A DNA stretch of 64,000 nucleotides from Mizuhopecten yessoensis (Eukaryota). Where the stretch lies: NCBI RefSeq assembly GCF_002113885.1, contig NW_018406672.1, forward strand, positions 211,540 to 275,539. The letters run 5' to 3'. The position numbers and the translations under genes are program-made. The notes beneath the pieces are model-generated. The model was not told the DNA's origin. It ran no database searches and saw nothing but the letters and a program-made list of their open reading frames with translations. This document shows positions 19,380-19,963 of this stretch, one piece after another. Within the stretch, counting starts at the first letter, position 1. Each line of letters opens with the position of its first letter.

Positions 19380-19963
19380 TTACAGCTTTACAGATATGCA
19401 AAAATATATCATTACGAGTGTTACTACCATCGTTGAGAAATTTGTGTAGCGGAGGGCGAGACCACTGTTTACGTAACCCATATCTCGGTCCCTATCTCCC
19501 AGGGTCGGATGGGTTGCCGATTGGTCCGATTGAAGGAGTGGAACCTCACATAACCGCCCCCCGTAGTCGGGGTCACATACACACTTGGTGGAATTCTCGA
19601 AATGTTTACAAATGCCACCGTTTTTACACATGACATTTTGACATAAATCTTGTTTCTGTTCACAGTGGATACCAGAATATCCGTCTGTACATACACATTT
19701 AAAGTAGGATTGCGTCCCCTTACAGGATCCGCCATTTTGACAACGATCATTCACACATAAGTTGTTAATAATCTGACAGTCATGGCCAGTATAATGGTCG
19801 GCGCACGCACAAACCGGAAGTTTACTTGAACTGTCTAGGAAACACGTGCCGCCATTGAAACACGGGTAGTCATCACATAGATCTACAGTTCTATCACAGT
19901 TGTCGCCCTTGTATCCCTCTTCACAAGAACACGTATACGTGCTTCCTTTATTTAAGCATTTCC
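19380..19963 (-). CDS. Delta: Delta-like terminal exon 9 (EGF6-EGF9, stalk, hydrophobic C-terminus, stop)
   Basis: gacttgcag acceptor; open frame to TAA at 19380-19382, ending ...[32 protein letters not shown]. Confidence 0.9.

What the first reader, a model, noticed from the sequence alone, without database searches (positions are those of the whole stretch)
19380..19520. Delta-type Notch ligand with no intracellular domain and a GPI-anchor-like C-terminus
Seen in sequence: after EGF9 comes a short polar stalk, then small residues (V-N-S-G), a ~10-aa spacer ([10 protein letters not shown]), a hydrophobic run ([14 protein letters not shown]) and only KL before the stop. An AATAAA follows ~510 nt later, and I found no ICD-like exon before the next gene at 16379. 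Established: canonical Delta/Serrate ligands are type-I membrane proteins whose cytoplasmic lysines are ubiquitinated by Mind bomb/Neuralized to drive the endocytic pulling that activates Notch, and tail-less ligands act as dominant negatives. The omega-site/spacer/hydrophobic-end layout is the classic GPI signal. Inference: this intact gene may encode a GPI-anchored, possibly sheddable, Notch decoy or cis-inhibitor with a full MNNL-DSL-DOS-EGF ectodomain, which would be an unusual mode of Notch regulation.
Basis: partly seen in the sequence, partly recalled or inferred. Interest (0 to 1): 0.85.

Follow-up and report, generated by a model that had tools for sequence, protein, structure and literature searches.

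The report
Tail-less, GPI-signal-bearing Delta ligand of molluscs
This scallop gene encodes a complete Delta-type Notch ligand that ends in a short GPI-anchor-like peptide instead of a membrane-spanning segment and cytoplasmic tail. The same tail-less form is kept in bivalves, snails and cephalopods, so molluscs have long carried a Notch ligand that cannot be activated in the usual endocytic way.

Summary
The minus-strand gene is Mizuhopecten yessoensis "delta-like protein 1" (605 aa, 9 coding exons, 58118-19380). It ends ...[32 protein letters not shown]-stop (TAA 19382-19380).

- **Transcripts.** Spliced cDNA contigs from four studies run straight through the stop into the 3'UTR. None uses the weak GTAAAG donor at 19391.
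- **Conservation.** It is not a private allele. Sixteen orthologues from bivalves, gastropods and cephalopods form a 100/100 clade. All end at or within 17 residues of a C-terminal hydrophobic run and have no intracellular domain. The scallop also keeps a canonical Delta with a TM segment and intracellular domain elsewhere.
- **Hydrophobicity.** The tails match the GPI-type tails of the scallop's own alkaline phosphatases (median +2.3 vs +2.7 kcal/mol). They separate completely from canonical Delta TM segments (median -3.5).
- **Omega site.** Between two scallop species the stalk is 27/27 identical up to N577. Identity then drops to 32% over a length-conserved 28-residue tail, as expected for a cleaved GPI propeptide.

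GPI attachment and the decoy or cis-inhibitor role remain predictions. I found no description of a natural GPI-type Delta.

The parts
58065..58118 (-). Coding exon 1: ATG and most of the signal peptide ([18 protein letters not shown]). The ATG directly follows an acceptor AG, so a 5'UTR exon lies upstream.
   Evidence: Exact mapping of P0013 onto the window and splice-site context.
40015..40308 (-). Coding exon 2: end of the signal peptide and the first part of the MNNL/C2 domain.
   Evidence: Pfam MNNL 5.5e-25; mapping.
32260..32320 (-). Coding exon 3: middle of the MNNL domain ([12 protein letters not shown]...).
30532..30786 (-). Coding exon 4: end of MNNL plus the DSL domain. It holds the equivalents of the five JAG1 DSL-face residues: I189, R191, R193, D195, L197.
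   Evidence: Pfam DSL 3.5e-20; alignment to DLL1 4XBM and JAG1 5UK5; residue table.
26116..26176 (-). Coding exon 5: first part of EGF1.
24038..24168 (-). Coding exon 6: end of EGF1 and EGF2 (both carry GW.G..C).
22932..23095 (-). Coding exon 7: EGF3 and part of EGF4.
   Evidence: The loose end of all four cDNA contigs at 20522 continues with letters found at 22935-22964.
20306..20519 (-). Coding exon 8: EGF4-EGF6 (part).
   Evidence: The cDNA joint 19963|20306 (GT..AG on the minus strand) is present in all four runs.
19548..19963 (-). Last exon, EGF part (EGF6 end to EGF9). dN/dS is 0.12 against Ylistrum balloti.
19467..19547 (-). Stalk E551-N577 ([27 protein letters not shown]). It is 27/27 identical in Ylistrum, with 10 synonymous and 0 non-synonymous differences, and ends at the proposed omega residue N577 (19469-19467).
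   Evidence: the L-x-S-D-(Q/E/D) motif recurs across the clade.
19383..19466 (-). Predicted GPI-attachment propeptide of 28 residues. S578-G579 are omega+1 and omega+2, the spacer is L580-T589, the hydrophobic run is M590-V603, and it ends with K604-L605.
   Evidence: GPI-signal definition in PMC7125958.
19380..19382 (-). Stop codon TAA, used in the transcripts.
18790..19379 (-). 3'UTR, with AATAAA at 19297-19292 and 18870-18865. The cDNA contigs end at 19194, 18924, 18894 and 18790.

Best explanation
The gene encodes a member of an old molluscan paralogue family of Delta. It has the full Notch-binding ectodomain: signal peptide, MNNL/C2, DSL and 9 EGF repeats.

The transmembrane segment and intracellular domain of canonical Delta are replaced by a 28-residue C-terminal GPI-attachment signal. 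The proposed omega site is N577, with small residues at omega and omega+2, a spacer of about 10 residues, and a marginally hydrophobic run of 14-16 residues reaching the C-terminus.

Shown here:
- The stop codon is used in mRNA.
- The tail-less form is conserved across bivalves, gastropods and cephalopods.
- The tail has the physical profile of GPI signals, not of TM anchors.
- The scallop also keeps a canonical Delta.

Inferred:
- GPI transamidase cleaves after N577 and the ligand sits in the outer leaflet.
- Without a cytoplasmic tail it cannot be ubiquitinated by Mind bomb or Neuralized, nor enter Epsin-dependent endocytosis, so it should be a poor trans-activator.
- It would then act mainly by occupying Notch, either as a cis-inhibitor in the expressing cell or as a competitor of canonical Delta/Jagged in trans.
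- It could possibly be released by phospholipase or a sheddase.
For: 1. **Transcripts.** Four cDNA contigs from four studies carry the 19963|20306 splice and continue unspliced through TAA 19382-19380 for 186-590 nt. All annotated isoforms share the C-terminus.
2. **Conservation.** Orthologues come from Ylistrum, Tegillarca, Mytilus, Saccostrea, Crassostrea, Sinanodonta, Mercenaria, Mactra, Patella, Lottia, Gigantopelta, Babylonia, Littorina, Octopus and Argonauta. All end 0-17 residues after a C-terminal hydrophobic run. The clade has 100/100 support, and its three main lineages (cephalopods, gastropods, and bivalves in two groups) are each recovered.
3. **Transcript support elsewhere.** Intronless transcript contigs in oyster (L011, ORF 136-1908 plus 282 nt of 3'UTR) and mussel (L012) give the same ends.
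4. **Canonical paralogue.** The scallop's canonical Delta on contig C5416 has LVLIVCLGVGIPLLLLIIVVIFFLL-RKRN plus an intracellular domain in one exon.
5. **Hydrophobicity.** The best 19-mer insertion energy of the short-clade tails is -0.18 to +6.2 (median 2.3). For seven scallop alkaline-phosphatase C-termini it is -0.09 to +5.8 (median 2.7; p=0.67 against the short clade). For 17 canonical Delta TM segments it is -0.66 to -6.1 (complete separation, p=1e-6).
6. **Omega site.** N577-S-G579 lies 28 residues from the end. Fourteen of 16 orthologues have such a small-residue triplet 16-32 residues from the end. This meets the definition in PMC7125958.
7. **Conservation break.** Between Mizuhopecten and Ylistrum, the stalk has 0 non-synonymous and 10 synonymous changes up to N577. 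The next 28 codons are 32% identical with dN/dS 0.41, yet have the same length and stop position. The last 28 columns are the least conserved part in all six species pairs.
8. **Function.** A Drosophila Delta that cannot bind Mib1 or Neur keeps residual activity and shows increased cis-inhibition (PMC5675594).
Against: - No dedicated GPI predictor and no experiment was available.
- The hydrophobicity scale is crude and ignores position within the membrane.
- GPI anchoring of the scallop alkaline phosphatases used as controls is itself inferred from homology.
- The hydrophobic run (14-16 residues) is shorter than the 'about 20' of the textbook signal.
- Several orthologues carry K or R within the last 2-7 residues (KL, SRRI, SSR, KLLSR). 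This could equally be a minimal positive-inside cytosolic tail.
- The caenogastropod members have 15-17 residues after the run. Patella and Littorina lack any strict omega triplet in the scanned range, and Babylonia's only one lies inside its hydrophobic run.
- On function, C. elegans DSL ligands without a cytoplasmic tail can activate Notch (established knowledge), so 'inhibitor' is not a safe default.
- In pectinids the equivalent of JAG1 F207, whose alanine mutant abolishes Notch binding (PMC3888931), is Leu. Binding strength is therefore unknown.
Confidence: 0.62

Rival explanations
1. The protein is a type I membrane protein with a short, weak transmembrane anchor and a cytoplasmic tail of only 0-7 residues, with no GPI. 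It is tail-less and not ubiquitinatable, as in the main reading, but it is not in the outer leaflet only and cannot be released by PI-PLC.
For: Basic residues sit near the extreme C-terminus in several orthologues (KL, SRRI, SSR, KLLSR, KRSLLFEY). The Lottia and Mactra tails approach TM-like hydrophobicity (-0.18, +0.52). Patella and Littorina lack any strict omega triplet, and Babylonia's only one lies inside its hydrophobic run.
Against: No tail reaches the range of the 17 canonical Delta TM segments, and 14 of 16 are above +0.9 kcal/mol. The uncharged runs are only 8-18 residues long. The sharp drop in conservation right after N577 is not expected for a functional TM anchor whose start lies 13 residues further on.
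Confidence: 0.22
2. The protein is a secreted Delta. The C-terminal peptide is removed or is too weak to hold the protein, so the ectodomain is released as a diffusible ligand or antagonist, like the secreted DSL ligands of C. elegans.
For: Some tails are very weakly hydrophobic (Ylistrum +3.4, lgn166 +6.2, Saccostrea +5.7). The stalk is perfectly conserved in pectinids and could be a processing or shedding site.
Against: A hydrophobic C-terminal run is kept in every one of 16 orthologues across more than three molluscan classes. That is hard to explain if it had no anchoring or signal role. Unprocessed GPI-type precursors are normally degraded rather than secreted (PMC7125958).
Confidence: 0.1
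3. The short form is only one isoform. A minor transcript uses the GTAAAG donor at 19391, or another site, to add a TM end and an intracellular domain.
For: A GT lies in frame at 19391 inside the hydrophobic run. Contigs drop rare variants, so absence is not proven.
Against: No joint is seen there in four runs. The donor is weaker than all eight real donors. No similarity to an intracellular domain exists anywhere in the window. In Ylistrum the codons at that position differ (GGT AAA CTA), and orthologues from 15 other species end the same way, including full-length cDNA contigs. In the canonical paralogue the TM segment and intracellular domain are not on a separate exon.
Confidence: 0.03
4. 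The feature is an artefact: an assembly error, a private nonsense allele or a decaying pseudogene.
For: None found.
Against: The same sequence is held by 20 runs from 12 studies. The stop position and tail length are conserved in a second scallop genus, with dN/dS 0.12 over the EGF part. All EGF cysteines are invariant across 11 orthologues.
Confidence: 0.01

Closest known systems
Canonical Delta / DLL1 (nearest solved structure: human DLL1, PDB 4XBM)
   Same: Signal peptide, MNNL/C2, DSL and 9 EGF repeats. phmmer gives E 9.8e-93 over residues 22-343. The scallop protein groups on the Delta side of the Delta/Jagged split (100/100).
   Different: It has no TM segment, no stop-transfer basic cluster, no intracellular domain and no C-terminal ATEV motif. 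It ends in a 28-residue GPI-type peptide. It fails the 'Delta' definition of PMC5356439, which requires a TM segment and an intracellular domain.
Lophotrochozoan 'Delta-like' genes noted by Gazave et al. (PMC2770060; PMC5356439)
   Same: Those surveys report extra Delta copies in Lottia (7 Delta copies in the 2009 survey; two 'Delta-like' in 2017) and loss of the ATEV motif. Lottia LOTGIDRAFT_224870 (P0374) is a member of the clade described here.
   Different: Those papers define Delta-like by fewer EGF repeats, could not trace orthology, and do not mention GPI (0 occurrences). Here the family keeps 9 EGF repeats, forms a supported clade spanning three molluscan classes, and is defined by its C-terminus.
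Secreted DSL ligands of C. elegans (DSL-1 and relatives)
   Same: They are natural DSL ligands without a cytoplasmic tail, showing that such ligands can be kept by selection (established knowledge; DSL ligands are listed in PMC3302757).
   Different: The nematode proteins are small, lack the full MNNL plus 9-EGF ectodomain, and are predicted not to be GPI-anchored (PMC3302757). The molluscan protein keeps the whole Delta ectodomain and a membrane-anchoring signal.
Engineered tail-less or ubiquitination-dead Delta (Drosophila Dl variants that cannot bind Mib1/Neur, PMC5675594; ICD-deleted Delta in flies and Xenopus, from established knowledge)
   Same: They have an intact ectodomain with no usable cytoplasmic tail. 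These variants show weak residual signalling and stronger cis-inhibition or dominant-negative action.
   Different: Those are laboratory constructs that keep a TM segment. This is a natural gene, conserved in three molluscan classes, with a GPI-type end.
[quoted passage not shown]
   Same: They are GPI-anchored proteins reported or suspected to act on Notch (PMC3302757).
   Different: Contactins are Ig/FN3 proteins with no DSL or MNNL domain. The scallop protein is a true DSL ligand by sequence.
Vertebrate DLL3
   Same: It is a divergent Delta paralogue thought to act as a cis-inhibitor rather than an activator (established knowledge).
   Different: DLL3 has a degenerate DSL, 6 EGF repeats and a TM segment plus intracellular domain. 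The molluscan protein keeps R191, D195, G198 and H199 of the DSL face invariant and loses the tail instead.

Membership tests
DSL (Delta/Serrate/LAG-2) Notch ligands | N-terminal MNNL/C2 domain | tested here: met
   PF07657 at 5.5e-25, 88 bits against a cut-off of 22.5; aligned to DLL1, JAG1 and DLL4 structures.
DSL (Delta/Serrate/LAG-2) Notch ligands | DSL domain with the conserved Notch-binding face (JAG1 F199, R201, R203, D205, F207) | tested here: inconclusive
   PF01414 at 3.5e-20. The equivalents are I189, R191, R193, D195 and L197: three are identical and two are hydrophobic replacements. The F207 equivalent is F in most orthologues, L in pectinids, Littorina and Octopus, and I in Sinanodonta and Babylonia. 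F207A abolishes binding (PMC3888931); the effect of Leu is unknown.
DSL (Delta/Serrate/LAG-2) Notch ligands | Tandem EGF repeats (9 in ancestral Delta) | tested here: met
   There are nine six-cysteine repeats between residues 224 and 550. All cysteines are invariant in 11 orthologues.
Delta sensu Gazave et al. 2017 (SP + MNLL + DSL + at least 9 EGF + TM + ICD) | Transmembrane domain followed by an intracellular domain | tested here: not met
   Only 2 residues follow a 14-residue hydrophobic run. The best 19-mer scores +1.6 kcal/mol, against -0.66 to -6.1 for 17 canonical Delta TM segments. No ICD-like sequence exists in the window.
Delta sensu Gazave et al. 2017 (SP + MNLL + DSL + at least 9 EGF + TM + ICD) | C-terminal ATEV PDZ-binding motif | tested here: not met
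   The protein ends ...CISVKL. Most canonical molluscan Deltas in the set end in ATEV.
DSL (Delta/Serrate/LAG-2) Notch ligands | Binds Notch EGF11-12 | not testable with these tools
Binding is inferred from homology only.
GPI-anchored proteins | N-terminal ER signal peptide | tested here: met
   [23 protein letters not shown] precedes the MNNL domain. This was judged by eye; no SignalP run was possible.
GPI-anchored proteins | Small omega and omega+2 residues 20-30 residues from the C-terminus | tested here: met
   N577-S-G579 lies 28 residues from the end. G579-L-A581 is an alternative. Definition from PMC7125958.
GPI-anchored proteins | Hydrophilic spacer of about 10 residues, then a hydrophobic stretch running to the C-terminus with no cytosolic tail | tested here: met
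   The spacer is [10 protein letters not shown] (10 residues) and the run is [14 protein letters not shown] (14) followed by KL. The hydrophobicity is indistinguishable from seven scallop alkaline-phosphatase tails (p=0.67) and fully separated from TM segments. The run is shorter than the textbook 'about 20'.
GPI-anchored proteins | Positive call by a trained predictor (NetGPI, PredGPI, big-PI) | not tested
   No such predictor is installed and there is no network access.
GPI-anchored proteins | Covalent GPI at the omega residue (PI-PLC release, mass spectrometry) | not testable with these tools
   Experimental.

The most novel reading that the evidence does not exclude
Conchiferan molluscs have kept, since before bivalves, gastropods and cephalopods split, a dedicated GPI-anchored Delta. 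It regulates Notch without ligand endocytosis, either as a built-in cis-inhibitor or decoy that sets the threshold for canonical Delta/Jagged, or as an activator that produces pulling force by a route independent of Mind bomb, Neuralized and Epsin. In the tree it sits outside all canonical bilaterian Deltas, so it could even be an ancient paralogue lost in other phyla.
Probability: 0.35. Interest if true: 0.8.

Novelty: new variant of a known kind. Interest (0 to 1): 0.66.

Why it matters
The current model of Notch activation requires the ligand's cytoplasmic tail. Mind bomb or Neuralized ubiquitinate it, Epsin-dependent endocytosis pulls on Notch, and the pull exposes the S2 cleavage site. 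Tail-less ligands have been studied mainly as laboratory constructs, where they behave as dominant negatives or strong cis-inhibitors.

Here a complete Delta ectodomain has been kept for a very long time on what looks like a lipid anchor, next to a canonical Delta in the same genomes. That makes it a natural experiment on two questions: whether ligand endocytosis is obligatory, and how cis-inhibition can be encoded as a separate gene.

It also matters for annotation. These genes are currently named 'delta-like 1', 'jagged-1a-like' or 'neurogenic locus protein delta-like' and would be counted as ordinary activating ligands in molluscan studies of shell colour, immunity and development.

The family can be tested directly with ordinary cell assays: PI-PLC release and Notch reporter co-culture.

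Tried and rejected
- **Exon-only protein search.** Searching with the last exon alone gave only distant EGF fragments, because the length window excludes full-length relatives. The MNNL exon search against representatives was what found the stored protein and its orthologues.
- **Own-genome search with the 54-residue tail** found a single copy, so there is no paralogue with this tail.
- **tblastn of nine canonical Delta C-termini against the whole window** hit only EGF repeats. No ICD-like sequence was found.
- **Private allele, assembly error, pseudogene.** Rejected.
- **Hidden ICD exon.** Rejected.
- **Literature.** Searches for a natural GPI-anchored DSL ligand and for the protein accessions found nothing relevant. 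The DLL4-Notch1 structure paper (the id tried, PMC4445638) is not held, so only the five JAG1 DSL-face residues were checked.
- **Earlier scan notes.** Nothing bears on this gene.
- **Hand-joined spliced model.** Exons were searched by reference, and the full-length work used the stored protein P0013 returned by the database.
- **Alkaline-phosphatase controls.** Two of nine C-terminal exons (L025, L027) end without a hydrophobic tail and were left out of the positive-control set. A tenth locus (L034) did not give a usable frame.
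Full report
**1. What is in the sequence**

On the minus strand the open frame 19970-19383 reads four and a half EGF repeats. It then continues with the stalk [27 protein letters not shown], followed by [26 protein letters not shown] and KL, and ends at TAA 19382-19380.

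Pfam, run exon by exon, finds MNNL (5.5e-25) at 39736-40332, DSL (3.5e-20) at 30386-30835, and EGF repeats in the remaining exons. An MNNL-exon search of 1.84 billion representative proteins returned a 605-aa protein with 100% identity (P0013). Its sources name it 'delta-like protein 1 isoform X1 [Mizuhopecten yessoensis]', XP_021356594.1.

P0013 maps exactly onto nine coding exons:
- 58118-58065
- 40308-40015
- 32320-32260
- 30786-30532
- 26176-26116
- 24168-24038
- 23095-22932
- 20519-20306
- 19963-19380

Together they make 1818 nt. I sent no hand-joined model to any search. Exons went in by reference, and full-length work used the stored protein.

**2. Is the stop really used?**

Twenty public runs from 12 studies hold the stretch. 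I laid four of them, from four different studies, on 15900-20700.
- Each has one contig that skips 19964-20305 with GT..AG on the minus strand, so these are cDNA.
- Each continues 5' into the exon at 22935.
- Each runs colinear through the stop into the 3'UTR, ending at 19194, 18924, 18894 and 18790.
- None has a joint at 19391.

The candidate donor there (ATATCT|GTAAAG) has T at -1 and A at +5, whereas all eight real donors of the gene have G at -1. The three annotated protein forms differ only at the N-terminus. Contigs can drop rare variants, so a minor isoform is not excluded, but the main mRNA ends the protein at L605.

**3. Not a private allele: a conserved molluscan family**

Full-length and profile searches and cluster look-ups give orthologues of about 590-650 aa, listed below. 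Two caenogastropods are longer because of inserts in the N-terminal domain.
- Pectinids: Ylistrum balloti (83% identical, also 605 aa)
- Arcid: Tegillarca
- Mussels: five Mytilus species
- Oysters: Saccostrea, and Crassostrea/Magallana (a cluster of 181 sequences, mostly transcript-derived)
- Unionid: Sinanodonta
- Heterodonts: Mercenaria, Mactra
- Gastropods: Patella, Lottia, Gigantopelta, Babylonia, Littorina
- Cephalopods: Octopus, Argonauta

Every one ends 0-7 residues after a C-terminal hydrophobic run, or 15-17 residues in the two caenogastropods.

Canonical Deltas of the same or related species (Sinanodonta, Mytilus, Pinctada, Euprymna, Argonauta, Owenia) have a strong TM segment, a basic stop-transfer cluster and an 85-175-residue tail, usually ending in ATEV.

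Intronless transcript contigs confirm the short end in oyster (L011: ORF 136-1908, then 282 nt of 3'UTR) and in mussel (L012).

A careful ML tree (33 rows, 514 columns, LG+C20) gives the following:
- The short clade has 100/100 support.
- Inside it, cephalopods, gastropods and two groups of bivalves each form a supported clade, as vertical descent would predict; the order among the gastropods and the two bivalve groups is not resolved.
- With Jagged as outgroup, the clade is sister to all canonical bilaterian Deltas (92/91).

Because the stem branch is long (0.61), I do not trust that deep position. The safe statement is that the family predates the split of bivalves, gastropods and cephalopods.

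The scallop genome has three strong MNNL loci. One of them (contig C5416) is a canonical Delta. Its EGF6-9, its TM segment (LVLIVCLGVGIPLLLLIIVVIFFLL, then RKRN) and about 130 residues of tail lie in one open frame. The short paralogue is therefore truncated within the corresponding last exon, and no separate intracellular-domain exon needs to be looked for. A tblastn of nine canonical C-termini against the whole window found only EGF matches. The tail itself is single-copy in the genome.

**4. GPI signal or short TM anchor?**

No trained predictor was available, so I used three indirect tests.

*Layout.* The review PMC7125958 defines the signal as follows: 20-30 residues after the omega site, small omega and omega+2 residues, about 10 hydrophilic residues, then a hydrophobic stretch. 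N577-S-G579 lies 28 residues from the end, with a 10-residue spacer and a 14-residue run followed by KL. Fourteen of 16 orthologues have a strict small-residue triplet 16-32 residues from the end. This test is weak on its own, because small residues are common in such stalks.

*Hydrophobicity, with internal controls.* I summed the Hessa 2005 scale over the best 19-mer.

| Set | n | Range (kcal/mol) | Median |
|---|---|---|---|
| Canonical Delta TM segments | 17 | -0.66 to -6.1 | -3.5 |
| Short-clade tails | 16 | -0.18 to +6.2 | +2.3 |
| Scallop alkaline-phosphatase C-termini | 7 | -0.09 to +5.8 | +2.7 |

- The short-clade tails separate completely from the TM segments (Mann-Whitney p=1e-6).
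- The positive control came from the last exons of the scallop's own alkaline-phosphatase paralogues, a family that is GPI-anchored in vertebrates and insects. Seven of nine end in the same small-residues, spacer, short-hydrophobic-end layout.
- The control tails are indistinguishable from the short Delta tails (p=0.67) and fully separated from the TM segments.

*Conservation.* I compared the last exon of Mizuhopecten and Ylistrum codon by codon (L010).

| Region | Codons | Amino-acid identity | dN/dS or changes |
|---|---|---|---|
| EGF part | 138 | 74% | dN/dS 0.12 |
| Stalk up to N577 | 27 | 100% | 0 non-synonymous, 10 synonymous |
| After N577 | 28 | 32% | dN/dS 0.41 |

The region after N577 keeps its length, its hydrophobic character and the position of the stop. 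A break exactly at the proposed omega residue is what a cleaved propeptide predicts. It is not what a TM anchor predicts, since such an anchor would start 13 residues further on. In all six close species pairs the last 28 alignment columns are the least conserved part of the protein.

*Points against GPI.*
- The run is shorter than the textbook length.
- Several orthologues carry K or R among the last residues.
- The caenogastropod and Patella ends fit less well.
- The alkaline-phosphatase controls are GPI-anchored only by homology.

I put GPI anchoring at roughly two in three and a minimal TM anchor at about one in five.

**5. How it most likely works**

*Shown.* The ectodomain is a full Delta. 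DLL1 (4XBM) matches at E 9.8e-93 over MNNL to EGF5. All EGF cysteines, and R191, D195, G198 and H199 of the DSL face, are invariant in the clade. Both EGF1 and EGF2 carry GW.G..C.

*Inferred.* The protein has at most two residues in the cytosol, or none if it is GPI-anchored. It therefore cannot be ubiquitinated by Mind bomb or Neuralized, and cannot be drawn into the Epsin pathway that supplies the pulling force. In Drosophila, a Delta that cannot bind these ligases keeps only residual signalling and shows increased cis-inhibition (PMC5675594). By established knowledge, ICD-deleted Delta acts as a dominant negative in flies and frogs.

The most likely role is therefore a Notch-occupying ligand: a cis-inhibitor in the expressing cell and a competitor in trans. 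It could be released by phospholipase or by a sheddase acting on the conserved stalk.

An activating role cannot be excluded, because nematode DSL ligands work without a tail. In addition, pectinids have Leu at the position of JAG1 F207, whose alanine mutant abolishes Notch binding (PMC3888931). Most other members keep Phe.

**6. Comparison with what is known, and novelty**

The gene is annotated in RefSeq, so its existence is not new. Surveys of Notch components noted extra 'Delta-like' genes in Lottia and other lophotrochozoans, with loss of ATEV. They could not establish orthology and do not mention GPI (PMC2770060, PMC5356439). A 2024 review of invertebrate Notch signalling has no occurrence of 'GPI'. 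Five literature searches found no natural GPI-anchored DSL ligand. The nearest item is a note that C. elegans DSL ligands are predicted not to be GPI-anchored, while contactin-type GPI proteins act as non-canonical ligands (PMC3302757).

The protein fails the strict 'Delta' definition, which requires a TM segment plus an intracellular domain. It is a DSL ligand by every ectodomain criterion. I rate it a new variant of a known kind.

**7. Verdict**

It is not one odd scallop gene but a conserved molluscan family of tail-less Delta ligands.

Noticed in passing
window 19467-19547 (-), compared with L010 about 43900-43980: The 27-residue stalk [27 protein letters not shown] is 100% identical between Mizuhopecten and Ylistrum despite 10 synonymous differences. 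It is more constrained than the EGF repeats (74%). A core L-x-S-D-(Q/E/D) right after EGF9 recurs in Tegillarca, Sinanodonta, Gigantopelta, Patella, Lottia and, in variant form, the mytilids (Mytilus has ADE for SD-). This could be a processing, shedding, modification or binding site.
   Followed up: partly
window 30604-30606 (-), residue L197: The DSL position equivalent to human JAG1 F207, whose alanine mutant abolishes Notch binding, is Leu in both pectinids, in Littorina and in Octopus. It is Ile in Sinanodonta and Babylonia, and Phe in the other members and in canonical Deltas.
   Followed up: partly
window 19004-19193 and 19047: Run X2 differs from the window in the 3'UTR by five single-base changes and a 26-nt deletion at 19047. 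The other three runs match the window, so this looks like an allelic 3'UTR variant.
   Followed up: no
window 17687-17859, 18014-18398, 18401-18597: Short, unspliced, low-depth (about 2.5-3.3) contigs in runs X3 and X8 lie downstream of the polyadenylation signals and are not joined to the Delta contig. They could be read-through, pre-mRNA or DNA carry-over.
   Followed up: no
window about 40736-41300 (-), intron 1: A tandemly repeated stretch translates in one frame to repeated [20 protein letters not shown] units, in a region of strongly negative GC skew (40001-42000). It is probably an intronic minisatellite.
   Followed up: no
window 15954-16568 (-): The ORF of the neighbouring gene starts with a signal-peptide-like segment (MAVLFPCVKVQCQLPAWTVVLYLTVLLCAANA) followed by a cysteine-containing domain. 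It has no Pfam match, and no contig from the four laid runs covers it.
   Followed up: partly
G000 contigs C2128, C4099, C370, C5158, C5304, C5506, C1165, C5192, C5583 (loci L013-L034): The scallop genome holds about ten alkaline-phosphatase paralogues, several in tandem. Seven of nine readable last exons end in a GPI-type tail, and two (L025, L027, tandem on C2128) end without one.
   Followed up: partly
window 20306-20330 (-), EGF6 start: Pectinids have lost the calcium-binding consensus at the start of EGF6 (EMFINPC in Mizuhopecten, ETYKNPC in Ylistrum). Most other members keep E-x-E-I-D-E-C.
   Followed up: no
P0015 (Pinctada imbricata, 491 aa) and P0049 (Octopus vulgaris, 517 aa): Both database models appear mis-annotated at the C-terminus. 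They break off inside an EGF repeat and continue with non-homologous residues. The Argonauta model P0414 shows the complete cephalopod end.
   Followed up: partly
tree: With Jagged as outgroup, the short clade branches outside all canonical bilaterian Deltas (92/91) rather than next to the molluscan Deltas. This means either an older origin with losses elsewhere or long-branch attraction.
   Followed up: partly
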